From the sequence record OK905446.1: 64,000 nucleotides of DNA; one strand, given 5' to 3'. Positions 1 to 10,300 of this stretch are shown here, one piece after another (the stretch's first letter is position 1; each line of letters begins with the position of its first letter). Below the pieces are notes generated by a model. It was not told where the DNA came from. It worked only from the letters and a program-made list of their open reading frames with translations, and searched no databases. The translations under genes were made by a program, and so were the position numbers.

Positions 1-106
1 AGTATCTACTTAAAGAAAACTGCATGACGGAGTAGTGCTCCGACCGAATGACACACGCAAATGAGTCCGGTTGACAAACGTTATATGTCCCAAAGTGTAC
101 TTTGGT

Positions 107-183
107 GTGGCAGTGGGTGAAGTGGAAATACCTCCGGGTTGTGATTCCGGAAGATGCGGGTTCGATCCCCGTCTGTCACCCCA
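107..183 (+). tRNA. tRNA-His(GTG)
   Basis: Cloverleaf: acceptor GTGGCAG/CTGTCAC, anticodon arm CCGGG-TTGTGAT-TCCGG, T arm GCGGG-TTCGATC-CCCGT, discriminator C180, encoded CCA 181-183. Confidence 0.95.
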
Positions 184-286
184 AAGTGCATTTAGCGAAA
201 AAAGCATTGTAGTAGCGCATGGGAATTCTGAATGCTTGAAATACCCATTAAGATCGCCAGTAGCTCATGCAATGCACTAACAATTT
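184..286 (+). ncRNA. candidate structured RNA in the His-Cys spacer
   Basis: Perfect stems 185-192/271-278 (8 bp) and 202-208/231-237 (7 bp); 219-223/244-248 would form a pseudoknot; flanked by tRNA processing sites. Confidence 0.35.
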
Positions 287-360
287 GCCCGAATCGTATA
301 ATGGAAGTATGAGGGATTGCAAATCCCGCGGTCAGAGTTCGATTCTCTGTTCGGGCTCCA
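287..360 (+). tRNA. tRNA-Cys(GCA)
   Basis: Acceptor GCCCGAA/TTCGGGC, anticodon loop TTGCAAA, T loop TTCGATT, encoded CCA. Confidence 0.95.
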
Positions 361-376
361 TTTTGAGAACTATATC

Positions 377-601
377 ATGAAACCAGAAGTTAAAGAATAC
401 TTAGACAGATCTGTTAAATTTTCAATTCGCTTGACTGAAGATAGCATTCGAAGAACTTCTGTGAAGTTGCATGAGCAAAAAGCTCACTTGCATGAATTGA
501 GAAAGCAACTTGATTGTGAACATGAAATGGTTGCTGATAATAGCGGGTTTGAATTAATTACTGCAACATGCACTAAGTGCGGTTTGCAAGATCAGTATTA
601 A
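377..601 (+). CDS. hypothetical protein (74 aa, C-terminal Cys/His zinc-ribbon-like motif)
   Basis: ORF track start at 317 overlaps tRNA-Cys; ATG at 377 after GAGAA is more plausible; CEH...CTKC motif. Confidence 0.6.
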   Translation: MKPEVKEYLDRSVKFSIRLTEDSIRRTSVKLHEQKAHLHELRKQLDCEHEMVADNSGFELITATCTKCGLQDQY

Positions 602-803
602 AGACGATGCACAAGTTGGATGTGCAAAGGGGTCGGTTATGGTTCAAGACTACGGTCTAAGAGGTTAATCGCTCGGAACTGAGCATGTTTGAGTTGCTAC
701 TTGCGAGTAGTGATTAGTGCGTAAGAAGCCCGTAGCTAGTATAATGAGTTGATAACTCGGCAGCCTAGCAGTGTCGCCAACATCGACATAACGACACAGT
801 AAT
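602..803 (+). ncRNA. candidate structured ncRNA upstream of tRNA-Leu(TAA)
   Basis: No plus-strand ORF; hairpins 608-613/621-626, 647-650/655-658 (cUACGg), 671-675/680-684, 694-701/706-713, 735-739/765-769, 746-750/754-758, 771-776/792-797. Confidence 0.5.
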
Positions 804-880
804 GCGCATGTGGTCCAATTGGCAGAGGCATGAGGTTTAAATTCTCAGGGATGGCGGTTCGAATCCGCCCATGCGTACCA
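804..880 (+). tRNA. tRNA-Leu(TAA), short variable loop
   Basis: Acceptor GCGCATG/CATGCGT, anticodon arm TGAGG-TTTAAAT-TCTCA, 5-nt variable region GGGAT, discriminator A, CCA. Confidence 0.9.
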
Positions 881-886
881 AATTTC

Positions 887-963
887 GCCCAACTAGTCCA
901 ATAGGCAGAGGCGCTAGTTTCAAACACTAGATGATCCGAGTTCGAATCTCGGGTTGGGCACCA
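887..963 (+). tRNA. tRNA-Leu(CAA), short variable loop
   Basis: Acceptor GCCCAAC/GTTGGGC, anticodon arm CTAGT-TTCAAAC-ACTAG, 5-nt variable region ATGAT, discriminator A, CCA. Confidence 0.9.
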
Positions 964-1175
964 AATTAACTTAGCAACGCGAATCGAAAGAGAGTGATTA
1001 GACCGTACGACACTATGGTCTTAAAAGAAGATATAGCTGAAAGGCTATGTGTAGACCTGCTAAGAGTCCCGTGGGTCGTTAAATTATCAAATGGGATCTG
1101 CGAAGCGCGTGGCACACGCTGGCAATAAGAGCAAATATGTGTCTGAGCATGAGAGCAGCATGCCACCGATTAAAA
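964..1175 (+). ncRNA. candidate structured ncRNA downstream of tRNA-Leu(CAA)
   Basis: Closing stem 970-976/1058-1064 encloses hairpins 1000-1006/1015-1021 and 1031-1038/1043-1050 (GAAA tetraloop); further stems 1107-1111/1115-1119 and 1147-1151/1159-1163. Confidence 0.5.
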
Positions 1176-1185
1176 GTCGCTCAGT

Positions 1186-1193
1186 TATAAATA
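1186..1193 (+). promoter_or_regulatory. T4-type late promoter TATAAATA
   Basis: Exact gp55 consensus 25 nt upstream of ORF 1219. Confidence 0.8.
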
Positions 1194-1218
1194 ATATAAA
1201 CTAACTGAGGGATAAGAC

Positions 1219-1398
1219 ATGAAATTAAAAACGTTTGATGAATATCACGACTTGACTGAGAAAGTTGAGAAGCGTGGTGACAAGTGGGTTGCTCTTTCAT
1301 CTAAAGGTCGTGTACTTGGTACACATGATACCGAGAAAGAAGCAAACGCACAGATCGCGGCTGTTGAAATTAGCAAAGCAGAACGTGGTAAGAAATAA
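1219..1398 (+). CDS. small putative internal head protein (59 aa, MKLKTFDEYHDLTEKVEKRGDKWVALSSKGRVLGTHDTEKEANAQIAAVEISKAERGKK)
   Basis: Translated by hand (below ORF-track cutoff); GAGGG RBS, late promoter, N-terminus resembles T4 capsid-targeting sequence. Confidence 0.75.
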   Translation: MKLKTFDEYHDLTEKVEKRGDKWVALSSKGRVLGTHDTEKEANAQIAAVEISKAERGKK

Positions 1399-1403
1399 TC
1401 TAC

Positions 1404-1492
1404 GGAGATATGGTCTAATGGTATGACAGCACCCTGCTAAGGTGTCGGACGTTAATAGCGTTCTCTGGGTTCGACTCCCAGTATCTCCGCCA
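1404..1492 (+). tRNA. tRNA-Ser(GCT)
   Basis: Acceptor GGAGATA/TATCTCC, anticodon loop CTGCTAA, long variable arm, discriminator G, CCA. Confidence 0.95.
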
Positions 1493-1499
1493 AATTCGC

Positions 1500-1766
1500 A
1501 ATAAGACATTGTACAGCAACTATTACTAATCAAAGAAGCAAACTTTAATAGTAATGAGGCGCACTAGCTGCTTTCTCAGTGATGACGTGAGCCCGGCGCA
1601 TTCTCGTGGTAGGAAATGGCCATTAAGACGGTGTTCGTACTGTTAAACGAAATAGGTCTCATGCCGAATCATGGGTATTCTCTTGATGAGAAACATCGAG
1701 ATAGTCAATTGAGATTTAAGGAAAAGACGATAAAACAATTCTCGAATGTCTGTGTATTGCACATCT
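1500..1766 (+). ncRNA. candidate structured ncRNA at the 3' end of the tRNA transcript
   Basis: No ORF; hairpins 1575-1578/1588-1591, 1634-1638/1647-1651, 1658-1663/1670-1675, 1681-1688/1694-1701; ends at a terminator; starts with the GACATTGTACAGCAA motif. Confidence 0.5.
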
Positions 1767-1791
1767 AAACCTGCCTTGAGCAGGTTTTTTT
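1767..1791 (+). terminator. intrinsic terminator ending the tRNA array
   Basis: AAACCTGC-CTTGA-GCAGGTTT followed by a T run. Confidence 0.85.
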
Positions 1792-1844
1792 GTTTATGGC
1801 GTTTGACAAATCGTGTAATCTGAGAATAAACAACGGGAGATCAC

Positions 1845-2222
1845 ATGTTGGTTAGTAATACAAAACGAGTTTCAATTTACAAGATGAAGCGTGTAGCTAG
1901 AATGCCTGATGCTGATGTATTCTTTCAAATGAGCCAATACGAGCATTTGAACAATAACAGCGTCAAGATTACCAATAAACTGACAGCATTCATCATACGA
2001 GGTCTATTTATTTACAGAACCGTCGTAGACTGTTCTCAAGCTGATGACCCTCATACTATGTGCGAACGACTTGAATTCGTCTCACAAGACGCTCTAAAGC
2101 GTTATATGAACATGAGTGGTAGACGTAAGCGATTCAGTTTAGACGATGTGCTATACGGGAATGAACAATGCGCATTCAATAAAGAAATCGGATTGGCAAT
2201 AACTTACTCTAGGCTATTCTAA
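1845..2222 (+). CDS. hypothetical protein
   Basis: 125-aa ORF with GGGAG RBS. Confidence 0.6.
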   Translation: MLVSNTKRVSIYKMKRVARMPDADVFFQMSQYEHLNNNSVKITNKLTAFIIRGLFIYRTVVDCSQADDPHTMCERLEFVSQDALKRYMNMSGRRKRFSLDDVLYGNEQCAFNKEIGLAITYSRLF

Positions 2223-2255
2223 ATACAGTTGAACTCAAACAATTGGAGATAGGTC

Positions 2256-2459
2256 ATGAGTGATAAAACCTTTGACAAATTCATGTCAGAATTAGAAGAA
2301 TCTCGTCCTGAAGACAAGAAGAAAAAACGTTCCATTAAAGACCGTGTAAAGTCTGGGGCAAAAAAAGCTGGTAAAGCAGCAAAGACAGGCGCTAAAGTTG
2401 CAGGTGGTGTAGCAGCGGCTGGTTTAGTAAGACAAGTAACAAAGAAATCTAACGAATAA
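2256..2459 (+). CDS. small basic protein, putative internal head protein
   Basis: GGAG/AGG RBS; N-terminus MSDKTFDKFMSELEE resembles a capsid-targeting sequence; Lys/Ala/Gly-rich. Confidence 0.65.
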   Translation: MSDKTFDKFMSELEESRPEDKKKKRSIKDRVKSGAKKAGKAAKTGAKVAGGVAAAGLVRQVTKKSNE

Positions 2460-2686
2460 TGAGCATTCACAGTAAATCGCACGCACGCGAAGGTCGTGGT
2501 CTAGGCAACGGTTTTAACGATAACTGGCGCAATAGTCCGCTTTGGAAAAACATCGGTCCCGACGCTCGTAAAAAAGACGAAGCAGGTGAAGAACCGAAAG
2601 AAGAGATCAAAGAGGTGAAGACGGAAAATTTAGATGAACTGACAGAACGCGAACGTATGCGCCGTTTGATGAGTCTAGCACACTAA
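2459..2686 (+). CDS. hypothetical protein
   Basis: TAATG coupling to the upstream ORF. Confidence 0.65.
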   Translation: MSIHSKSHAREGRGLGNGFNDNWRNSPLWKNIGPDARKKDEAGEEPKEEIKEVKTENLDELTERERMRRLMSLAH

Positions 2687-2711
2687 CCTCATATTGGCGT
2701 AACTTCTCGGT

Positions 2712-2757
2712 GGGAGATATGTGGTCAAGGCAATGGGTTCGATTCCCGTGTCTCCCG
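2712..2757 (+). other. tRNA-like minihelix (acceptor stem + T arm; no D stem, anticodon arm or CCA)
   Basis: GGGAGAT/GTCTCCC acceptor, ATGGG-TTCGATT-CCCGT T arm, 14-nt linker with TGGTC; resembles both ends of tRNA-Ser at 1404. Confidence 0.65.
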
Positions 2758-2785
2758 TATTCTATTAACTAAGAGGTGAACAATC

Positions 2786-2998
2786 ATGGAAATTCTTTCT
2801 GAATCCACACTAAAAAGCATGGAACTATCTGAAGTTTGCAAAGTACGCAAAGCACTTAATAAATTTATTGCACGTCTGCGCAAAGATTTTCGACAATTTC
2901 AATGCACCCGAGTTGATGAGAAATATTACAAAGAGCATCTTATGTACTCCACGATTGTAGATCGAATGATCGAACACAAGTTACGCCATTCACACTAA
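2786..2998 (+). CDS. hypothetical protein
   Basis: GAGGTG RBS, 70 aa. Confidence 0.7.
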   Translation: MEILSESTLKSMELSEVCKVRKALNKFIARLRKDFRQFQCTRVDEKYYKEHLMYSTIVDRMIEHKLRHSH

Positions 2999-2999
2999 C

Positions 3000-3030
3000 A
3001 AAAAAGCCCCAATTAAGGGGCTTTTCTTTT
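3000..3030. terminator. bidirectional intrinsic terminator
   Basis: AAAAAAGCCCC-AATTAA-GGGGCTTTT between convergent genes. Confidence 0.85.
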
Positions 3031-3400
3031 ATAACTTCTGCCTGATCATTAGATCATGAAGACCTTCAACGGCAAAGTCGTTGAGTCTATCAAGCTCTAG
3101 ATCCAGTTTGTCCATTGCTTGAACTAGCTCTTCGCTGATACCTTTCTTATAACGAAGCTTGTGAATCAAGCGTTTCGCGTCGAGAACATTCATTTTGATG
3201 TGCTCGAAATTGTATCTCACGACTTCATAACGGTACTTGTTTTGCTTGGCTTTCTGTTCAATGTGCAGAAGCTTGGTATGCATTTTAGCAAGACGCTTGA
3301 TACTGCGAGTGTCTTCACCTGCTTTATATCTTGCCCATTGCCTTTCAAACCACCCTTCATTTAGATATTCATCAAAAGAAATAATTTTTTCGTCTAACAT
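3029..3400 (-). CDS. putative internal head protein
   Basis: Likely start MLDEKIISFDEYLNE (capsid-targeting-like); GATAAATA late-like box at 3432-3439. Confidence 0.6.
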   Translation of the reverse strand: MLDEKIISFDEYLNEGWFERQWARYKAGEDTRSIKRLAKMHTKLLHIEQKAKQNKYRYEVVRYNFEHIKMNVLDAKRLIHKLRYKKGISEELVQAMDKLDLELDRLNDFAVEGLHDLMIRQKL

Positions 3401-3450
3401 GTTGACTTCCACTTGATAATCCTGTATTCTGTATTTATCAGTCCGAACTA

Positions 3451-3813
3451 ATGAGAATTATCATGTACATTATGATTGATGATGAGCGCAACATTAACAA
3501 CTTCACGAATGAAACTGTTCGTGATGATGAAAAGATGACGTTGCGCACATTTGAAGAAGGCATGACATTCGTCAAGCACACTAATTTAACCGACATTACG
3601 TTATTCATGGATAATGACTTAGGTGATGTCGTAGGTCGTGAGGGTTACGATATTCTCTCACATGCAATCGACCATAGCAATTTCCCTAAGACTGTTGTTA
3701 TAGTCACCAACAACCCATCTGCTCGATTTAAAATGTGTATGATGCTAAATCAAACGCAGAAGTACAAGCAAGTTGGTTCGATTTTCATGAGGTATGATAC
3801 ATGTCGCACGTAA
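3451..3813 (+). CDS. cyclic-phosphate-processing receiver-like domain protein (cREC_REC-like)
   Basis: Motifs IDDERN, RTFEE, MDNDLG, EGYDIL, VTNNPSA match the stand-alone receiver family linked to RNA repair neighbourhoods. Confidence 0.65.
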   Translation: MRIIMYIMIDDERNINNFTNETVRDDEKMTLRTFEEGMTFVKHTNLTDITLFMDNDLGDVVGREGYDILSHAIDHSNFPKTVVIVTNNPSARFKMCMMLNQTQKYKQVGSIFMRYDTCRT

Positions 3814-4169
3814 ATGTGATCTCTTCTGCTGCGAATGCAATTCGCGTAACTCTACCTAATGGCGACGTGCGTGAAGTCGTTGTTGCCGATAGCTGTCACT
3901 TCGGTCGTAACATGCAATCAGTATTCAAGGTCATCAAAGAACTTGGTGGCACAATTGAGCACCGATATGAACTAGGTGATCGCGGTCAGGGATTTATTAA
4001 CTACTGCGGTGAATATTTCAATCGTGCAGACGCATATGAGATTGCGAAAGAATGCGGTCAACCGTTTAACGACAACTATACGTTGCCTGATAATGATGGT
4101 GATGGTCGCTTGCGCCTTGACAGTTCATGTATTCGCCACTTTGACAATTCGATTAAGGATTATGTATGA
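3801..4169 (+). CDS. conserved phage hypothetical protein
   Basis: QGFIN...YFNRADAYEIA motif; overlaps both neighbours. Confidence 0.7.
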   Translation: MSHVNVISSAANAIRVTLPNGDVREVVVADSCHFGRNMQSVFKVIKELGGTIEHRYELGDRGQGFINYCGEYFNRADAYEIAKECGQPFNDNYTLPDNDGDGRLRLDSSCIRHFDNSIKDYV

Positions 4170-4504
4170 CCAAGTTATACGATACATTAGTTAGTAAAGT
4201 CGCACAGAATCGTTCAACACGCGAAGAAATGTTTGTTGTTGAACTGCACAAAGCAATAGAGCGAAAAATTGGCGGCGTTCAGGGATTTTCTTTCCCTATT
4301 AGCATTCAAGTTCAATTGCAACGTAATGAATGTTGTGATGAAATGATGACTCTAATACGCGAAGTTCTGAAGAAAGAAGGGTTTCATAACTTCGACTCGC
4401 AATTTGGTCATTACAATGGCGATCCGCGTGATATGCGCGACTACTCATACTCGTATGTGAAAATCACAATCCGAGAAAACACAAAAGCGGGGTTTCAGTC
4501 ATGA
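4166..4504 (+). CDS. hypothetical protein
   Basis: ATGA overlap; weakly similar in layout to 4501-4818. Confidence 0.7.
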   Translation: MTKLYDTLVSKVAQNRSTREEMFVVELHKAIERKIGGVQGFSFPISIQVQLQRNECCDEMMTLIREVLKKEGFHNFDSQFGHYNGDPRDMRDYSYSYVKITIRENTKAGFQS

Positions 4505-4818
4505 TTAACCACAATGAATTGCGCGTTCAAATTCAAGAGCGCGAAGTTGAACTAAAACGTACTCTATCCGAGCATTACACCAAAGAATGTGAAAAAGAGT
4601 TTATGCACGCTGTCGAATCAGAATCTAACTTTCCGATTAAGATCAAGGTGCAGATTCACGCAGCCGACAAAGACAAGCGTGGTGCGACTATCATTCGTTC
4701 ATTCTTCGAAGAGCATGGTTATCGTTCACTTCGTACATCGTACGAAACAGGCGGCAGCGTACTTGTTGAGATTTACGAGAATGGTACTAACTTGACTCGG
4801 CATCACAATTACAAATAA
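4501..4818 (+). CDS. hypothetical protein
   Basis: ATGA overlap with upstream ORF. Confidence 0.7.
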   Translation: MINHNELRVQIQEREVELKRTLSEHYTKECEKEFMHAVESESNFPIKIKVQIHAADKDKRGATIIRSFFEEHGYRSLRTSYETGGSVLVEIYENGTNLTRHHNYK

Positions 4819-4830
4819 ATTCAAAAAAGT

Positions 4831-4859
4831 GTTTACACGGGTTCAAATCCGTGTATAAT
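4831..4859 (+). promoter_or_regulatory. early sigma70-type promoter with a palindromic spacer
   Basis: GTTTAC-N17-TATAAT (T4 early consensus), A-tract UP element; TACACGG/CCGTGTA inverted repeat in the spacer. Confidence 0.8.
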
Positions 4860-4909
4860 CATCACATCAAAACGACATTATACAGCAATTTAATATGAGG
4901 AAATCAACA

Positions 4910-6346
4910 ATGTCAGCATTTATGAACGCTATGCAATCAAACGATTCACGTACAGCAAACGGTGCACTTACTCACAGCACTTCAAGCAACGAGTGTCTAA
5001 ACTTGTTCTTCGGTATTGCTGCTATGCGTGGCAACGATCAGTCTAAAACTCTGTTCAGTCGTGCGTTTGCAGAAAACCCAGAACTAGCGACTCGCATCCT
5101 GCTATGGTCTCGTGACGTTCGCGGTGGCGCAGGTGAACGTGGTACTTTCCGTACTCTATTCGCTAAACTTTGTAATGAACAGCCAGACGTTGCTCGTGCT
5201 GTAATGTCAAAAGTACCAGAATTGGGTCGTTTCGATGACTTGATTGTTGCATTCGGTACTAGTCTTGAAAAAGACGCGATCACTATGTGGTCAAATGCGA
5301 TTGTCAATGACAAAAACGGTCTTGCTGCGAAGTGGTTCCCGCGTGAAAACAGCAAAAACGGTCATGTGTTCAAGCGCACAATCAAGTCTCTTGATGTGAC
5401 TGCAAAGCAGTGGCGTAAGATTCTTGCTCTTTTGTCTGACACCGTTGAACAAAAGATGTGTGCTCAAGAATGGGATGCAATCGACTTCGGTAAGTTGCCT
5501 TCTGTAGCGTCTGCTCGTTATCAACAAGCATTCGGTCGTAACGCTTCGACACGTTACACAAGCTACATCGAATCACTTCAAAAAGGTGAAGCGAAGATCA
5601 ACGCTGCTGCATTGTTCCCATACGATGTTGTTAAAAGCGTTAGTCACGGTAACGCATCTGTAGCGAATGAGCAATGGAAAGCTCTACCGAACTACATGGA
5701 AGGTTCTGATGAGCGCATCATCCCTGTTGTAGACGTGTCTGGTTCTATGAGCACGCCGATCAACGCAGGTACTGACCGTTCAGGCGTGTCTTGTAAGCAA
5801 GTTGCAATGTCTCTAGGCATCTACGTTGCTGAACGAAACGAAGGCATCTTCAAAGACCAGTTCATTTCGTTCTCAAGTGATCCGCACTTCCACCAGTTGC
5901 GCGGTAGCTCTCTTAAAGAGCGTCTTGACAACATGAATCGCTCAGGCGAAGACATGAGCACTAACATCACCAAGTGTTTCAGCGTTCTATTAGAACGTGC
6001 GAAGAAGGCAAACCTTTCACAAGAAGAAATGCCAACTAAGTTGCTTATCATGAGCGACATGGAATTCGACGAAGCAAATCGCGGTGGTGGTTGGTATGGT
6101 CGCGGCGAAATTACTAATTTCGAAGCAATCAAAGGCATGTACGCACGTGCAGGCTATGAAATGCCTCAACTAGTGTTCTGGAACATCCGTGGTCGTATCG
6201 GTAACGTTCCTGTTAAGTCAGGCGAAGCGGGTACAGCGTTGGTTTCAGGTTGTAGTCCATCAATCTTGACTTCATTGTTGGGTGGTGAACTTGAGCCAGT
6301 CAAGATCATGCTGAAAACTGTATGCGTTGATCGCTACAGCTTTTAA
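4910..6346 (+). CDS. DUF2828-family TROVE/Ro60-like helical domain plus vWA domain protein
   Basis: TANGA, RDVRGGAGER, GRFDDL, AAKWFPRE, INAAALFPYD, MIDAS DVSGS, SDMEFD and VFWN motifs; RBS GAGG favours start 4910. Confidence 0.85.
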   Translation: MSAFMNAMQSNDSRTANGALTHSTSSNECLNLFFGIAAMRGNDQSKTLFSRAFAENPELATRILLWSRDVRGGAGERGTFRTLFAKLCNEQPDVARAVMSKVPELGRFDDLIVAFGTSLEKDAITMWSNAIVNDKNGLAAKWFPRENSKNGHVFKRTIKSLDVTAKQWRKILALLSDTVEQKMCAQEWDAIDFGKLPSVASARYQQAFGRNASTRYTSYIESLQKGEAKINAAALFPYDVVKSVSHGNASVANEQWKALPNYMEGSDERIIPVVDVSGSMSTPINAGTDRSGVSCKQVAMSLGIYVAERNEGIFKDQFISFSSDPHFHQLRGSSLKERLDNMNRSGEDMSTNITKCFSVLLERAKKANLSQEEMPTKLLIMSDMEFDEANRGGGWYGRGEITNFEAIKGMYARAGYEMPQLVFWNIRGRIGNVPVKSGEAGTALVSGCSPSILTSLLGGELEPVKIMLKTVCVDRYSF

Positions 6347-6353
6347 ATAAGCG

Positions 6354-6380
6354 AGGGCGGCAATTATGCCGCCCTTTTTG
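6354..6380 (+). terminator. intrinsic terminator
   Basis: GGGCGGC-AATTAT-GCCGCCC-TTTTT. Confidence 0.85.
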
Positions 6381-6395
6381 TTTGCAGAGGTGAAA

Positions 6396-6914
6396 ATGTT
6401 CGATTGGGAAGCAATAGAAACAGCTATCAATAACAGTCACCCGAATAGTACGATCTATGTCGGGTGTGATAGCAAGCGTAAGAGTGATATGATCAGTTAC
6501 GCTACTGTAATCATCATTCACCTTGAGGGTAGTAAAGGCGCTCAAGTATTCAAAACTATCGAAACAGAACCTGCTTACATGTCTTGTAAAGACGGTATTC
6601 GAAGTCGTTTGATGAATGAAGTATACAAAGCTGGTGAGACTGCATTGCGAGTCAAACCAATGTGTGGCCCTCGCGGGTTTGAAGTTCACGTTGACATCAA
6701 CCCTGACCCGTCACATCGTTCTCACATTGCGTATAACGAAGCTAAAGGGACTATCTTGGGATATGTGGGTCAAGAGCCCGTATTCAAGCCCGATGCGTTC
6801 GCAGCGTCTTGTGCAGCGGATTATGACGCGGTGCGCCGTGCTGATAAAATAGCAAAACGAAAAGAACTGCGAAGAGCGAAGCGAAAAGCCAATAAAGCAA
6901 ATCGTAGAAAATAG
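6396..6914 (+). CDS. YkuK/DUF458 ribonuclease H-like protein with a basic C-terminal tail
   Basis: YVGCDS, YATVIIIH, EVHVDIN, KPDAFAASCAAD motifs; GAGGTG RBS before ATG 6396. Confidence 0.75.
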   Translation: MFDWEAIETAINNSHPNSTIYVGCDSKRKSDMISYATVIIIHLEGSKGAQVFKTIETEPAYMSCKDGIRSRLMNEVYKAGETALRVKPMCGPRGFEVHVDINPDPSHRSHIAYNEAKGTILGYVGQEPVFKPDAFAASCAADYDAVRRADKIAKRKELRRAKRKANKANRRK

Positions 6915-6969
6915 TTGCAATGTGTTCTCTGCCTGATATACTTCTTGTAAATCTAATGGAGAACATATT

Positions 6970-7275
6970 ATGACACGCGGCGAATTTGAAGACTGGAAAC
7001 GAATTACCGAACGTTCTACCAACAAATGGACACTAGATGAAGTGACTCAGCACAATCGAGGTAGCTATCTGTTCTATAAAGGCGGCATTGACGGGAATTA
7101 TATTCGTGTTGAAAACGGTCGAGCGTCTATAGGGAATTATGAAGGTGCGTTGCCGCATATCGGTGAAGCATGTTTCATTGAGCTATACGCAAATACTTTT
7201 GAAAACAATGATGTTGCGATTCAACGTCTTATCGAGACGGGTGGGTTGCCATTTCTTGTTGAACTATTCAGTTAA
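6970..7275 (+). CDS. hypothetical protein
   Basis: GGAG RBS, 101 aa. Confidence 0.75.
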   Translation: MTRGEFEDWKRITERSTNKWTLDEVTQHNRGSYLFYKGGIDGNYIRVENGRASIGNYEGALPHIGEACFIELYANTFENNDVAIQRLIETGGLPFLVELFS

Positions 7276-7290
7276 TCATTTGATTATCTT

Positions 7291-7315
7291 CAGGCGCCCA
7301 TGTGGCGCCTTTTTT
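7291..7315 (+). terminator. intrinsic terminator
   Basis: AGGCGCC-CATGT-GGCGCCT-TTTTT. Confidence 0.8.
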
Positions 7316-7319
7316 GTAT

Positions 7320-7327
7320 CATAAATA
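7320..7327 (+). promoter_or_regulatory. late promoter CATAAATA
   Basis: One-mismatch T4 late box upstream of tail fibre 1; same variant precedes fibre 2. Confidence 0.7.
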
Positions 7328-7365
7328 CTGTCATATGAAATATTTCAATAAATGGAATGAAACTA

Positions 7366-10300
7366 ATGGCAGAATTACGTTCAACAACCGCGATTGGCGG
7401 TAACATAGTATGGCACGGAGGTAATTTACGTTTTGATCCGCAAGGGGAAACGGTTCTTTACAACGGCTATAAACTCTATACAGAAAATGACAAGCCAGAC
7501 CCGCATACTGATTTAACCGTACCTGTTGTTAAACTTGGTGGCGATACAATGACTGGCGACCTTGTCATTGCTAAAGCAACTGCTCAACTTCATTTAAGCA
7601 GTACTGCAAACACAGACGCAAGTTTGTACTTGACTGAAGATAGTGGTAATCACGGTGTTCGCTATCATTACGAAGGCAATGTGAATCAATGGCAAATTAT
7701 TCGCCGTGAGTCTGGGGCTGAAAATGTTGTCATGTACGGTTCTCGTTCTAATAACAACGTCGTGATTAACGGCATTGGTTACGTCAACACAACTCAGAGA
7801 ATCTTTGCAGATAACTATCACCCGAATGCAGACAAATGGACGACTGCTCGTACGTTGACATTAGCAGGCGAAGTGACTGGCTCAGTATCAATCGACGGTA
7901 CATCAAACGTAACGATTAATGCTGTTCTACCGAATCATACTACATTTGCAGAAGTTGGTATCAATGCAGCATATCCAGAATATAAAGCAACCGGCGCGAC
8001 CACAGCGGGTGTTGATACTACGGTAGATTGGGATACTCTTGTTCGTGGCGGTACATACTATAAGCTATCACAAGGTACAAATCGACCATCTGGATTTACT
8101 GGTTATTGGTATCTTCAAAACTTCACATACGGGTCTACTGAGAATACTACTCAAATTGCATACCCATACGGTCTGACTGGCAACGTTGGTACGATTGCTA
8201 TGCGTACTCAGTATAGCGACGTGTGGGAAGATTGGGTGTATATGTATCATACAGATTATCACCCGAATGCAGACAAATGGACAACTGCTCGTACGTTAAC
8301 GCTCTCGGGTGATGTTAGTGGCTCGGTATCAATTGATGGTAGCTCAAACGTTACATTGACAACTGTAGTTGCTGATGATTCTCACACTCACGATGGGCGA
8401 TACTACACTGAAGCAGAAGCCGATGGTCGATTTGTAAACTCGACTGGCGATACAATGACCGGTAACTTGACAATCGGTGCAAACGATCTTATTTTCGATG
8501 TTGGTGCCAAGATTACGCGAGAAGCAAACCCAGGTACTGCTTTAATCCCGGGTAGTGACAACTCACTGAACTTATATGCGCCTACTAACGGTAACTTGAC
8601 TGTCGTTCTATCTGCGAATGATTCAAACGACTCGTTTAACGTCGTTTCATCTGAAGGAACAGAAACAACCGGTCACGTGTATACAAGACGTTCATTCTGG
8701 GTTAATGGTCAAGGTCACACATACGCTGCTGGTAACATGTATGTCAACGATTCTCAACGAGTATTTGCGGACAACTATCACCCAAATGCTGATACGTGGA
8801 CAACTGCTCGTACGTTAACACTTTCAGGTGATGTGACTGGTTCTGTGTCAATCAATGGTAGCTCAAACGTTACATTGACTGCTACAGTAGGGAACGATTC
8901 GCACACTCACGATGGTCGATACTACACTGAAGCAGAAGCTGATGCTCGATTTGCGCCTATAGCAGGTGGCGGGTATGTTCAGAAAACCGGCGATACAATG
9001 AGTTCGTCATTGACAATTGCGGGTACTGCGGGTAATACTGAACCGTCTACTGACAACGTTAAAGTCGATTACTACGGTCTAATCGGTAATCGCGGGTCGG
9101 TATATTTGCATAACGCATACGCGGCAGGCGATGTTGCTATTGGCGTTGGTGGCATTTTCGGCACAAATCGAAAGCTAACAATTGCAAGTTCTGCTATTAC
9201 TGCTACTGTAAACATCACAGCTCCTACATTCGTTGGTGCTCTGAGTGGTAACGCATCTACTGCAACTACTGCAAAACAAGAAGCTAAGTGGACAACTGCT
9301 CGTACGTTGACAGTTGGTAAAACTGCTAAGTCAGTAGATGGGACGGGTAACGTAGCGTGGTCTGCTCAAGAGATCACGGGTACATATAGTGCCGATCAGC
9401 AAACATTTGGTACAAACAACCGTGTAACAACTGATGAATTCGTTTCATTGTTGAGTTCGAAGGGTGCGTTTTCTACGTTCTACTGGGTTTGTCGTGGTAG
9501 TTGGTCATACGCTGCACAGGTTACAGTAGATACGGGATATGGCGTATTCGGAACGGCCGGTTCGGTTATTGAAGTAATTGGTAACTCAACAACGGGTTGT
9601 ACGATTCGAGTAACTACTCCGACTACAGCATCTGGTGCAACTCAGAGACAAGAGTTCATCTATGTGAGTAACGGTACATCATACTCACCGGGTTGGCGTG
9701 CACCTTATGGTTCACATTACCACCCACTAGCCGATAAATGGACGACTGCGCGTACATTAACACTTTCGGGTGATGCAAGTGGTTCAGTATCAATTGATGG
9801 TTCAGCTAACGCTACGTTGGCAGTTACTGTTGCTGATAACAGTCATAACCACTCAAGCACGACTGGTAGTTTTACTCTTGGCGGAACACTGATTCATACC
9901 GGCACTGCTTCATACGATAAACTAAGGGTGTGGTCGAGTGGCTCTTACACAATCGGGATGACTAACAACTTGTCGTTTGGTTGGCTGGGCACTGATTATG
10001 CAATGACGTTCACTATGAACAACTCAACAACTCGTGGGTTCTTGTGGCGTGATGAGTCAGACGCTGTTACTGATGGTGCAATGTCATTGACTACTAACGG
10101 AAACCTGATGGTTAAGAACGTTATTGGTCTGGGTGGTGATACTACTCGATACATGCAGAACTCATCAAACGAGGGTAGCTGGCTTTTCCGTTCTGATAAC
10201 GGGATCACATGGCATTTCGGTGCTAGAAACACGTCATGGGTTCATAACTCAACCGATGCAACGAGTGGGTTCTATTACTATCAGGCAATTCAGTCTGCTA

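What the first reader, a model, noticed from the sequence alone, without database searches (positions are those of the whole stretch)
184..6914. tRNA-array-linked RNA repair/RNP module: structured ncRNAs, receiver-like domain, TROVE-like vWA protein and RNase H-like nuclease
Seen: next to the tRNA array lie several structured non-coding spacers, a tRNA-like minihelix, a cREC_REC-like receiver, a DUF2828 TROVE-like/vWA protein and a YkuK RNase H-like protein with a basic tail. Established: Ro60/Rsr (TROVE+vWA) binds tRNA-mimicking Y RNAs and partners with nucleases or RtcB, and cyclic-phosphate receiver domains occur in RNA repair neighbourhoods. Inference: a phage RNP that protects, repairs or clears tRNAs cut by host anticodon nucleases, with one of the spacer RNAs acting as a Y-RNA analogue.
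Basis: partly seen in the sequence, partly recalled or inferred. Interest (0 to 1): 0.8.

Follow-up and report, generated by a model that had tools for sequence, protein, structure and literature searches.

The report
Ro60-like RNA module beside phage tRNAs
At the end of a Vibrio phage's tRNA gene cluster lie conserved non-tRNA RNAs and genes for a Ro60-type ring-shaped RNA-binding protein and an RNase H-like nuclease; these two genes sit next to tRNA genes in many unrelated phages, which points to a phage-made tRNA surveillance or repair particle whose RNA partner is still unknown.

Summary
The window is Vibrio phage VS1, a KVP40-like T4-type jumbo phage. The DUF2828/DUF7788 protein models as a full-length Ro60 (TROVE ring plus vWA domain with an intact MIDAS motif). 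Relatives of it occur in 711 phage records. In a mycobacteriophage relative, a YrlA-type Y RNA lies just downstream.

Across 85 viral loci, 38 have tRNA or tmRNA genes within 10 kb on the same strand, and 15 have them within 1 kb. The YkuK-like gene keeps four invariant acidic residues. It recurs beside the Ro-like gene, inside tRNA arrays, and next to CCA-adding enzymes or cREC plus ligase. Other Ro-like loci carry RtcB or Rnl ligases.

A tRNA/RNA-repair context is therefore supported. It is a loose, mosaic neighbourhood and not an operon. No Y RNA was detected in the window.

Two spacers are real structured RNAs:
- E1 (1053-1166) is a covarying pseudoknot. It is not coupled to Ro; on plasmids it follows a ShosT-like phosphoribosyltransferase gene.
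- S4 (1493-1790) has a terminal stem and shares a 17-nt motif with the Ro gene's leader. It is the best Y-like candidate.

The link to anticodon nucleases is untested.

The parts
107..183 (+). tRNA-His (GTG). The last five tRNAs of the array begin here.
   Evidence: ARAGORN; Rfam tRNA, 48 bits.
287..360 (+). tRNA-Cys (GCA)
377..601 (+). Small ORF (74 aa from the ATG) inserted between tRNA-Cys and tRNA-Leu. It is present in nt-1 and QD01 and absent in KVP40.
804..963 (+). tRNA-Leu (TAA) at 804-880 and tRNA-Leu (CAA) at 887-963
964..1052 (+). Spacer S3a with two stable hairpins; 99% identical to KVP40
   Evidence: Fold z = -2.48; identity.
1053..1166 (+). E1: structured RNA of about 115 nt. Its 5' domain is an H-type pseudoknot, followed by a small hairpin and a variable 3' domain. 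It belongs to a family not in Rfam.
   Evidence: Covariation: 92% of cells paired against 29-52% when slid; 4 of 5 pseudoknot pairs are compensatory. Model R1 scores 68.9 bits at 1052-1121. Homologues lie in phage tRNA arrays and downstream of plasmid PRTase genes.
1219..1398 (+). Small ORF (59 aa), homologue of KVP40.0311, lying between E1 and tRNA-Ser
1404..1492 (+). tRNA-Ser (GCT), the last tRNA of the array
1493..1790 (+). S4: conserved RNA of about 300 nt, running from the 3' end of tRNA-Ser to an intrinsic terminator (1767-1787). A terminal stem joins 1498-1510 to 1745-1760. The 17-nt motif lies at 1503-1519. A weakly conserved 38-50-aa ORF (1616-1768) overlaps it.
   Evidence: The terminal stem appears in the MFE, the centroid and the RNAalifold consensus. 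Hairpins show compensatory changes in nt-1. Terminator. ORF length and frame are not conserved.
1845..2686 (+). Three small genes of unknown function (1845-2222, 2256-2459, 2459-2686)
   Evidence: PHROGs 20301, 24717 and 5438.
2712..2757 (+). tRNA-like minihelix: acceptor-like stem 2712-2718 with 2750-2756, T arm 2733-2749, a 14-nt linker, and no D or anticodon arm
   Evidence: Sequence. The spacer is 96-98% identical in KVP40, nt-1 and ValKK3, while most neighbouring genes are 70-84%. T-loop word statistics. Absent in the D48x phages.
2786..2998 (+). Small gene (70 aa) followed by a two-way terminator at 3002-3025
3029..3412 (-). Gene on the opposite strand (127 aa), homologue of KVP40.0305
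3451..3813 (+). cREC_REC protein (120 aa): a receiver-like domain predicted in the literature to open cyclic phosphates
   Evidence: Pfam PF20274, 2.7e-14. Asp pairs in IMIDDE and FMDNDLG. Literature: PMC7824862, PMC9503650.
3801..4818 (+). Three small genes: arn.3-like (3801-4169), 4166-4504 and 4501-4818
   Evidence: PHROGs 839, 15681 and 15675; KVP40 annotation note.
4832..4909 (+). Promoter-like site (TTTACA, 16 nt, TATAAT at 4832-4859, with hairpin 4836-4853) and the leader of the Ro-like gene, which carries the 17-nt motif at 4872-4888
4910..6346 (+). Ro60-like protein (DUF2828 TROVE-type helical ring plus DUF7788 vWA with MIDAS). The ORF is open from 4895; the likely start is 4910.
   Evidence: Pfam and PHROG 850. 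AlphaFold model, pLDDT 80.6. Foldseek top hits are Ro60/TROVE structures, E 1.6e-7 to 2.3e-5. Invariant D280, S282, S284, T356 and D388.
6353..6376 (+). Intrinsic terminator-like hairpin after the Ro-like gene
   Evidence: 10 pairs, 7 of them G-C, followed by a T run.
6396..6914 (+). YkuK-like RNase H-like protein (172 aa) with invariant D25, E75, H98, D100 and D142 and a Lys/Arg-rich C-terminal tail
   Evidence: Pfam PF04308, 7e-17; PHROG 11311; alignment A7.

Best explanation
This is the 3' end of the phage's tRNA operon, followed by an early-gene block that encodes a Ro60-type RNA surveillance system.

**Shown.**
- The 478-aa protein models with the Ro60 architecture: a helical TROVE ring plus a vWA/MIDAS domain.
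- It is paired with a YkuK-like RNase H-superfamily protein with four invariant acidic residues throughout the KVP40-like group, and again in several unrelated phages.
- Both genes recurrently sit beside or inside tRNA arrays.
- In other phages the same genes neighbour RtcB or Rnl ligases, CCA-adding enzymes and cREC.

**Inferred mechanism.**
- As in Ro60/Rsr, the ring would take the single-stranded 3' end of misfolded, unprocessed or cleaved tRNA-like RNA into its hole.
- The YkuK nuclease, with its basic tail, would trim or destroy that RNA, much as PNPase does for Rsr.
- cREC would open 2',3'-cyclic phosphate ends, so that the phage's ligases or CCA-adding enzyme (encoded elsewhere) can finish a repair.
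- The substrates could be the phage's own array transcripts, or tRNAs cut by host nucleases.
- A Y-like partner RNA is not established. S4 is the best candidate and the tRNA-like minihelix is second. E1 is not a candidate.
For: - **Fold.** Foldseek of the model (pLDDT 80.6, pTM 0.81) returns only Ro60/TROVE structures at the top. These are 9kop, 9l5y (Thermus phage phiLo Ro60), 1yvr, 1yvp, 9nfa and 9nep, with 513-584 aligned columns, TM 0.50-0.58 and probability 1.0. vWA-only hits follow at E >= 0.015.
- **MIDAS.** The DxSxS, T and D residues are invariant in 40 homologues.
- **Family.** There are 711 phage records, including mycobacteriophage proteins annotated 'Ro-like RNA binding protein'. 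In phage Jobypre a YrlA match (RF02553, 39 bits, E 6e-6) lies 130 nt downstream on the same strand. This agrees with PMC4201824.
- **tRNA linkage.** 38 of 85 loci have a tRNA or tmRNA gene within 10 kb, 15 within 1 kb, all on the same strand, in 14 of 15 clusters at 70% identity. Among contigs of at least 100 kb the figure is 17 of 23. The phage Alf5 array starts 166 nt after the gene.
- **RNA-repair neighbours.** P100 has tRNAs, ROOL RNA, the Ro-like gene, an HD protein and RtcB. GAP32 has an Rnl ligase directly upstream. 16 of 85 loci carry an Rnl, CCA-adding, kinase or cREC-type neighbour.
- **YkuK.** The Ro-like gene is within 5 kb in KVP40-like phages and in L096, L136, L137, L139 and L143. 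YkuK is embedded in tRNA arrays in L143, L142 and L140. It lies next to a CCA-adding enzyme in L139 and L067, near one in L144, and near cREC plus ligase in L140.
- **S4.** Terminal stem and shared 17-nt motif: 2 matches in 64 kb against 0.02 expected, conserved in five relatives.
Against: - Nothing here shows RNA binding, nuclease activity or any substrate.
- In the window the genes are not an operon. The Ro-like gene has its own promoter-like site and terminator, and three genes of unknown function separate it from cREC.
- cREC was not found by tblastn in phage 1.081.O. It is rare next to Ro-like genes (3 of 85 loci).
- No RNA ligase lies in 1-7400.
- The largest Ro-like cluster (29 loci) almost never has tRNAs nearby.
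- No whole-genome background for tRNA proximity was computed, and the loci are phylogenetically clustered.
- There is no YrlA or Y_RNA hit in the window or in 11 environmental loci.
- Pfam and PDB sequence searches do not place the protein in TROVE itself.
Confidence: 0.45

Rival explanations
1. There is no module. The cREC, Ro-like and YkuK genes are independent accessory genes that accumulate, like tRNAs and homing endonucleases, in a plastic region between conserved blocks. Their proximity reflects shared insertion hot spots and shared early transcription, not joint function.
For: - Gene content between the array and the Ro-like gene varies among close relatives. cREC was not found in 1.081.O, where an Ig-like gene sits in that stretch. 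A homing endonuclease lies upstream of the Ro-like gene in D480. ValKK3 has 2 kb of extra genes.
- The Ro-like gene has its own promoter-like site and terminator.
- 29 related loci lack tRNAs.
- The neighbours of Ro-like genes are mosaic, not fixed.
Against: - The Ro-like/YkuK pairing survives in at least six lineages with 34-93% protein identity and different gene orders.
- Distances to the nearest tRNA pile up below 1 kb. That is 15 of the 38 loci with any tRNA within 10 kb, against about 4 if they were spread evenly.
- The recurring neighbours all belong to RNA-end chemistry: RtcB, Rnl, CCA-adding enzymes and cREC.
Confidence: 0.25
2. The Ro-like protein and the nuclease act on host RNA, not on phage tRNAs. 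As Rsr with exonucleases helps degrade rRNA under stress, the pair would help dismantle host ribosomal or transfer RNA for takeover and nucleotide recycling.
For: - Established knowledge: Rsr/Ro60 with PNPase degrades structured RNA, including rRNA (summarised in PMC4201824).
- The gene has an early-type sigma-70-like promoter.
- The phage invests heavily in nucleotide metabolism nearby (nrdABC and NadV in the KVP40 map).
Against: This reading does not explain the tight, same-strand adjacency to phage tRNA genes, or the repeated neighbourhood of ligases and CCA-adding enzymes, which build RNA ends rather than degrade them.
Confidence: 0.1
3. This concerns E1 only. E1 is the RNA partner (antitoxin or regulator) of a ShosT-like phosphoribosyltransferase carried by plasmids. 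The phage copies, expressed from tRNA arrays without the protein, would act as decoys against such a system and would have nothing to do with the Ro-like protein.
For: - E1 follows a ~250-aa PRTase gene by 60-110 nt on the same strand in 12 bacterial or metagenomic loci and on plasmids. In Pluralibacter, where no PRTase ORF was seen upstream, E1 ends in a terminator.
- The PRTase matches ShosT at 3e-8 to 6e-8 and a retron III-A PRTase effector at 4e-4.
- E1-carrying phages lack the PRTase.
- E1 is absent from about 80 Ro-like loci.
- E1 occurs in T5-like Vibrio phages.
Against: - Toxicity of this PRTase and any RNA-protein contact are untested.
- The ShosT similarity covers only the C-terminal PRPP-binding part.
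- E1 is single-copy and lies downstream of the gene, unlike ToxI-type antitoxins.
- In the Pluralibacter chromosome E1 stands without an obvious PRTase.
Confidence: 0.2

Closest known systems
Bacterial Rsr/Ro60 with YrlA Y RNAs and the rsr-yrlBA-rtcBA repair operon (Salmonella, Deinococcus; PMC4201824, PMC7790460)
   Same: - Ring-plus-vWA protein fold.
- The gene lies next to tRNA-like RNA genes on the same strand.
- RtcB or other ligases are neighbours in some phage relatives.
   Different: - The sequence family is DUF2828/DUF7788, not Pfam TROVE.
- No YrlA is detectable here.
- The neighbour is a YkuK-type nuclease, not RtcB/RtcA, and no PNPase link is known.
- Real tRNA arrays occupy the place of the Y RNA.
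Mycobacteriophage 'Ro-like RNA binding protein' with YrlA-like RNA
   Same: Same protein family (31-34% identity, E 1e-74). The genes are phage-borne, with a tRNA close by.
   Different: Those phages have a recognisable YrlA 130 nt downstream. VS1 has a terminator and then the YkuK gene at that position.
Thermus phage phiLo Ro60 (PDB 9l5y, 9kop; PMC12135203)
   Same: It is among the best structural matches to the model (E 1.6e-7, TM 0.56-0.58). It is a phage-encoded Ro60.
   Different: Only 16% identity. By sequence profile the two align only weakly, around the MIDAS region (E 0.6).
cRec and ROT/TROVE genes of jumbo phages (Iyer et al. 2021, PMC7824862; 2022, PMC9503650)
   Same: Those surveys already report cRec domains and a ROT/TROVE protein in subsets of jumbo phages and assign them to RNA repair.
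   Different: The passages retrieved by term searches (cREC, TROVE, YkuK, KVP40, Ro60; 'YkuK' occurs 0 times in either paper) do not describe the pairing with YkuK, the physical linkage to tRNA arrays, or the RNAs E1 and S4. The papers were not read in full.
T4 stable RNAs rnaC and rnaD (species 1 and 2) at the end of the T4 tRNA cluster
   Same: They are non-tRNA RNAs of unknown function, transcribed with the tRNA cluster and placed at its 3' end. rnaC carries a T-arm-like element, like the VS1 minihelix.
   Different: There is no detectable sequence or model similarity to E1 or S4.
ROOL (and, from my own knowledge, GOLLD) large RNAs in phage genomes
   Same: They are structured non-coding RNAs. 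In Listeria phage P100 a ROOL match lies inside the tRNA array, 1 kb upstream of the Ro-like gene.
   Different: E1 and S4 are much smaller and match neither family.
ShosTA and retron type III-A PRTase effectors; type III toxin-antitoxin pairs such as ToxIN (comparison for E1 only)
   Same: A PRTase of the toxin-like clade sits next to a structured RNA on mobile elements. From my own knowledge, a precedent exists of phages copying an RNA antitoxin.
   Different: No ShosA, no reverse transcriptase and no RNA repeats are present. The RNA lies downstream of the gene. Toxicity is unknown.

Membership tests
Ro60 / TROVE-vWA (Rsr) proteins | Helical-repeat ring followed by a vWA domain, over the full length | tested here: met
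   The eight top Foldseek matches are all Ro60/TROVE structures, with 513-584 aligned columns, TM 0.50-0.58 and E 1.6e-7 to 2.3e-5. Ring closure itself was not measured on the model.
Ro60 / TROVE-vWA (Rsr) proteins | MIDAS motif (DxSxS, then T, then D) in the vWA domain | tested here: met
   D280, S282, S284, T356 and D388 are invariant in 40 homologues.
Ro60 / TROVE-vWA (Rsr) proteins | Sequence membership in the Pfam TROVE family, or significant sequence similarity to solved Ro60 proteins | tested here: not met
   Pfam gives DUF2828 plus DUF7788 only. The profile search against PDB reaches TROVE proteins only at E 0.6. The relationship is visible by fold, not by sequence.
Ro60 / TROVE-vWA (Rsr) proteins | A Y RNA (YrlA type) encoded within a few kb on the same strand | tested here: not met
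   No RF02553 or RF00019 match in 1-7400 at E <= 10. The feature is met in family member Jobypre.
Ro60 / TROVE-vWA (Rsr) proteins | Binds misfolded RNA 3' ends and Y RNA | not testable with these tools
   -
cREC_REC (cyclic-phosphate processing receiver domain) | Pfam PF20274 above its curated cut-off | tested here: met
   54 bits against 27.
cREC_REC (cyclic-phosphate processing receiver domain) | Receiver-type acidic residues (two Asp positions) | tested here: met
   IMIDDE (D10, D11) and FMDNDLG (D54, D56) in the translation. Judged by eye, not by a structural alignment.
cREC_REC (cyclic-phosphate processing receiver domain) | Neighbourhood of RNA ligase, Nudix, sirtuin or 2H genes, as described in PMC7824862 and PMC9503650 | tested here: not met
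   None lies in window 1-7400. A cREC plus ligase pair lies 2 kb from a YkuK gene in L140.
YkuK / DUF458 (PF04308, RNase H-like) | Pfam model above cut-off and conserved acidic residues | tested here: met
   62 bits against 25. D25, E75, D100 and D142, plus H98, are invariant in 25 homologues.
YkuK / DUF458 (PF04308, RNase H-like) | RNase H-like three-dimensional fold | not tested
No solved relative was found by sequence.
tRNA (for the minihelix 2712-2757) | Cloverleaf with D and anticodon arms | tested here: not met
   Not called by ARAGORN or Rfam tRNA. Only the acceptor-like stem and the T arm are present.
T4 rnaC/rnaD stable RNAs | Sequence or structure homology to T4 rnaC or rnaD | tested here: not met
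   blastn finds only T-arm words. Model R1 and an S4 profile do not hit the T4 region. Only the position in the cluster is alike.
Type III toxin-antitoxin RNA (for E1) | Tandem RNA repeats next to a toxin gene | tested here: not met
   E1 is single-copy and lies downstream of the PRTase gene. Toxicity is not testable here.

The most novel reading that the evidence does not exclude
E1 is a new RNA class that works with a ShosT-like phosphoribosyltransferase on plasmids, as antitoxin, regulator or substrate. Vibrio and Aeromonas phages of two unrelated families would have captured the RNA alone into their tRNA arrays as a counter-defence decoy. In parallel, S4 or the minihelix would be a new kind of Y RNA for DUF2828-type Ro proteins.
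Probability: 0.15. Interest if true: 0.8.

Novelty: new variant of a known kind. Interest (0 to 1): 0.62.

Why it matters
Ro60 is a conserved RNA quality-control protein, and its role in phages is unknown. This work shows three things:
- A large, previously 'DUF'-labelled phage family (711 phage records and more than 7,800 database proteins) has the Ro60 fold.
- It sits beside tRNA genes in many phage lineages.
- It is repeatedly paired with an uncharacterised RNase H-like protein and with RNA-end enzymes.

Together these give a concrete, testable system for how large phages look after the tRNAs they bring along. This is timely because host tRNA-cleaving defences are known to select for phage tRNAs.

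Two unannotated structured RNAs also come out of the analysis. One of them, E1, is shared between phage tRNA arrays and a plasmid phosphoribosyltransferase module and has no Rfam family.

Tried and rejected
- **E1 as the Y-RNA analogue: rejected.** A covariance model finds E1 only in KVP40-like phages and Aeh1 among 85 sources (1.4 Mb). It finds E1 in none of the other Ro-like loci. It does find E1 in T5-like Vibrio phages and in plasmid PRTase loci.
- **Known RNA families: none.** There is no Rfam match for E1, S4 or the minihelix at E <= 10, and none for the bacterial E1 copies.
- **Homology of E1 or S4 to T4 rnaC/rnaD: none**.
- **Thermodynamic stability as evidence of structure: uninformative.** z ranges from -2.5 to +1.0.
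- **cREC as a constant partner of the Ro-like gene: rejected** (3 of 85 loci; not found in 1.081.O).
- **Sequence-only link to solved Ro60: failed**.
- **S4 as a protein gene: unlikely but not excluded.** The 38-50-aa ORF changes frame or length in VS1, QD01 and nt-1 and is missing in D482.
- **The T-arm-like hairpin in the Ro-like promoter (4836-4853).** It is not T-loop-like in nt-1, ValKK3 or 1.081.O, so it is probably incidental.
- **KVP40 infection transcriptome.** None was found in the paper library.

Full report
**Identity of the window.** The first 8 kb are 100% identical to Vibrio phage VS1 (OK905446.1, 124001-132000). They are 86-97% identical to KVP40-like T4-type jumbo phages. In KVP40 the homologous stretch is the end of a ~30-tRNA array, followed by hypothetical genes, an 'RNA-binding protein', a PF04308 protein and the long tail fibre gene.

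**Observation check.**
- ARAGORN and Rfam agree on five tRNAs at 107-1492.
- Pfam confirms cREC_REC (3451-3813), DUF2828 plus DUF7788 (4895-6346) and RNaseH_like PF04308 (6366-6914). PHROGs place every ORF of the block in phage families, most of them of unknown function.
- PHROG alignments and ribosome-binding sites put the likely starts at 4910 and 6396.
- The minihelix is a 7-bp acceptor-like stem plus a T arm with a canonical T loop, and it has no D or anticodon arm.
- The T-loop word GGTTCRAWTCC occurs three times in the 64 kb against 0.07 expected: in tRNA-Leu, in the minihelix, and in a hairpin within the Ro-like gene's promoter.
- The non-coding stretches S3a, S4 and the minihelix spacer are 97-99% identical to KVP40. 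Most neighbouring genes are 72-84% identical. This argues for function at the nucleic-acid level.
- Folding energies alone are not exceptional.

**The Ro-like protein.**
- A 40-sequence alignment gave an AlphaFold model with pLDDT 80.6 and pTM 0.81.
- Against the PDB, the eight best Foldseek matches are all Ro60/TROVE proteins aligned over the whole length. They are the Thermus phage phiLo Ro60, a TROVE-domain crystal structure, and Xenopus and human Ro60 with and without RNA. E-values run from 1.6e-7 to 2.3e-5 and TM from 0.50 to 0.58. After these come vWA-only hits at E >= 0.015.
- The MIDAS residues are invariant.
- By sequence alone the link is invisible, and Pfam files the protein under DUF2828/DUF7788 and not under TROVE.
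- The family is large: more than 7,800 database hits and 711 phage records spanning Felixounavirus, Herelleviridae, Campylobacter, Staphylococcus, Enterococcus, Bacillus and jumbo phages, and mycobacteriophages whose copy is annotated 'Ro-like RNA binding protein'.
- In mycobacteriophage Jobypre, Rfam's YrlA model matches 130 nt downstream of that gene on the same strand (39 bits, E 6e-6). This fits the report that YrlA-like RNAs lie within 4 kb of Ro60 genes in bacteria and 22 phages (PMC4201824).
- So DUF2828-type proteins are Ro60 relatives by fold, and one member sits next to a YrlA-like match.

**Linkage to tRNA genes.**
- Of 85 viral or metagenomic loci encoding a relative (46-93% identity), 38 have a tRNA or tmRNA gene within 10 kb. 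Seventeen have one within 2 kb and 15 within 1 kb. Every one of these RNA genes is on the strand of the Ro-like gene.
- 14 of 15 clusters at 70% identity contain such a locus.
- Among contigs of at least 100 kb the count is 17 of 23. Random placement relative to one array would give roughly 15-25%; this is my estimate, not a computed control.
- One large cluster (29 loci) has almost no tRNAs nearby.
- In cultured phages, the Alf5 array starts 166 nt after the gene. Listeria phage P100 has tRNAs, a ROOL RNA match, the Ro-like gene, an HD phosphohydrolase and RtcB within 8 kb. GAP32 has an Rnl-type RNA ligase directly upstream.
- By tblastn, 16 of 85 loci carry an Rnl ligase, a CCA-adding-enzyme-like gene, an AAA_33 kinase-like gene or cREC within 10 kb.

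**The YkuK-like protein.**
- The family is small: 62 database hits.
- Its alignment shows invariant D25, E75, H98, D100 and D142, which fits a metal-dependent RNase H-superfamily active site. The basic tail is confined to the T4-like subgroup.
- Contexts: directly after the Ro-like gene in all KVP40-like phages, in D480, in 1.081.O and in L096. Within 5 kb of a Ro-like gene in L136/L067, L137, L139 and L143. Inside tRNA arrays in L143, L142 and L140. Next to a CCA-adding enzyme in L139 and L067, and near one in L144. About 2 kb from cREC plus a ligase in L140.
- The fold itself could not be modelled.

**cREC.** The domain is well scored and keeps the receiver-type aspartates. The literature predicts that it opens cyclic phosphates in RNA repair and NAD-derived metabolism, without experimental proof (PMC7824862, PMC9503650). 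In this gene block it is dispensable (not found in 1.081.O), and it is rarely found next to Ro-like genes.

**The RNAs: E1 (1053-1166).**
- E1 also occurs, always within tRNA arrays and usually just 5' of tRNA-Ser, in D48x Vibrio phages, in Aeromonas T4-like phages and in T5-like Vibrio phages.
- Its 5' domain is an H-type pseudoknot. On 21 sequences, 92% of cells pair, against 29-52% when the partners are slid. Four of the five pseudoknot pairs show compensatory changes, and one pair shows GC, CG, AU, UA and GU.
- The same RNA is found in a few bacterial chromosomes, in metagenomes and on Enterobacterales plasmids. There it lies 60-110 nt downstream of a ~250-aa phosphoribosyltransferase gene weakly similar to the ShosT toxin. 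In Pluralibacter, where no PRTase ORF was seen upstream, E1 is followed by a terminator.
- The phages that carry E1 lack that protein.
- E1 has no Rfam family and is absent from the other Ro-like loci. It is therefore not the Y-RNA analogue; its role is open.

**The RNAs: S4 (1493-1790).**
- S4 runs from the last tRNA to a terminator.
- It keeps a terminal stem between its two ends in all relatives. D482 has matching shortenings on both strands of that stem.
- Internal hairpins are replaced by different but still pairing sequences in nt-1. The middle part varies in length.
- S4 shares a 17-nt motif with the leader of the Ro-like gene: two matches in 64 kb against 0.02 expected. The motif is conserved at both places in KVP40, nt-1, ValKK3, VH7D and 1.081.O.
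- A terminal stem formed by the two ends is the general Y-RNA layout, so S4 is the best candidate partner. This is inference only.

**The RNAs: the minihelix.** It is conserved in the KVP40 subgroup, absent in D48x, and resembles the T-arm-bearing 3' part of T4 rnaC. It could equally be an RNase P/Z processing signal inside the mRNA.

**Synthesis.**
- Shown: a Ro60-fold protein, a conserved pairing with a YkuK-type protein, recurrent physical linkage of both to tRNA arrays, a mosaic of RNA-end enzymes around them in other phages, and two real structured RNAs in the spacers.
- Inferred: that they form a particle acting on tRNA-like RNA, that cREC takes part, and that S4 is a partner.
- Untested: any connection with host anticodon nucleases.

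**Prior knowledge.** Earlier surveys already noted cRec and ROT/TROVE proteins in jumbo phages as RNA-repair components (PMC7824862). I did not find three things described in the library that I searched: the tRNA-array linkage, the YkuK pairing, and the E1 and S4 RNAs. For the two surveys this rests on term searches, not a full reading.

Noticed in passing
window 1053-1166; L132:5188-6127; L145:2699-3651; L146:2636-3636; L104:6158-6330: The E1 RNA of the phage tRNA array also occurs on Enterobacterales plasmids and in some chromosomes. There it lies directly downstream of an unannotated-function phosphoribosyltransferase gene weakly like the ShosT toxin. This is a two-part module with no Rfam family.
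   Followed up: partly
window 1503-1519 and 4872-4888: A 17-nt motif is shared by the 5' end of the S4 RNA and the leader of the Ro-like gene, and it is conserved at both sites in five related phages. What binds it is unknown.
   Followed up: partly
window 4836-4853: A hairpin in the spacer of the Ro-like gene's promoter-like site carries a T-loop-like word (GGTTCAAATCC). On the minus strand it reads as a terminator-like site. It is not T-loop-like in nt-1, ValKK3 or 1.081.O.
   Followed up: partly
L151:1968-2519 (Listeria phage P100): A ROOL RNA match (86 bits, just under Rfam's cut-off of 99) lies inside the tRNA array, 1 kb upstream of the Ro-like gene. An HD phosphohydrolase and RtcB lie downstream.
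   Followed up: no
L061, L068, L073, L076, L079 (viral contigs): Phage-encoded tmRNA genes lie 4-8 kb downstream of the Ro-like gene on the same strand in five contigs. Three contigs (L079, L085, L140) also carry CTA-anticodon (amber suppressor-type) tRNAs, and L143 carries a tRNA-SeC call.
   Followed up: no
window 377-601 and 602-803: A 74-aa ORF plus 200 nt of non-coding DNA are inserted between tRNA-Cys and tRNA-Leu. They are shared with nt-1 and QD01 (and partly ValKK3) but absent in KVP40, where the two tRNAs are 2 nt apart.
   Followed up: partly
L148:5868-6458 (Vibrio phage D480): A homing endonuclease gene sits on the opposite strand immediately upstream of the Ro-like gene and replaces most of the leader found in the KVP40 group.
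   Followed up: no
L004:60-140 and L001:5006-5080: A second, paralogous copy of the 3' part of S4 (TAGTCAAYTG...AAAGACGA.AAAACA...TTGTCTGT) lies further upstream in the tRNA arrays of D482, KVP40 and VH7D.
   Followed up: no
L139:5784-8349 and L067:15761-18550: A YkuK gene is directly followed by a CCA-adding-enzyme-like gene and an NMN-adenylyltransferase/Nudix fusion gene in two unrelated contigs, each with a Ro-like gene and a tRNA-Ser a few kb upstream.
   Followed up: partly
window 7357-64000 (by homology to KVP40, L133): The rest of the window holds long tail fibre genes on the plus strand. On the other strand it then holds asiA, phoH, topoisomerase gp52, nrdABC, NadV, and queuosine-type (QueC- and QueE-like) and radical SAM genes.
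   Followed up: no
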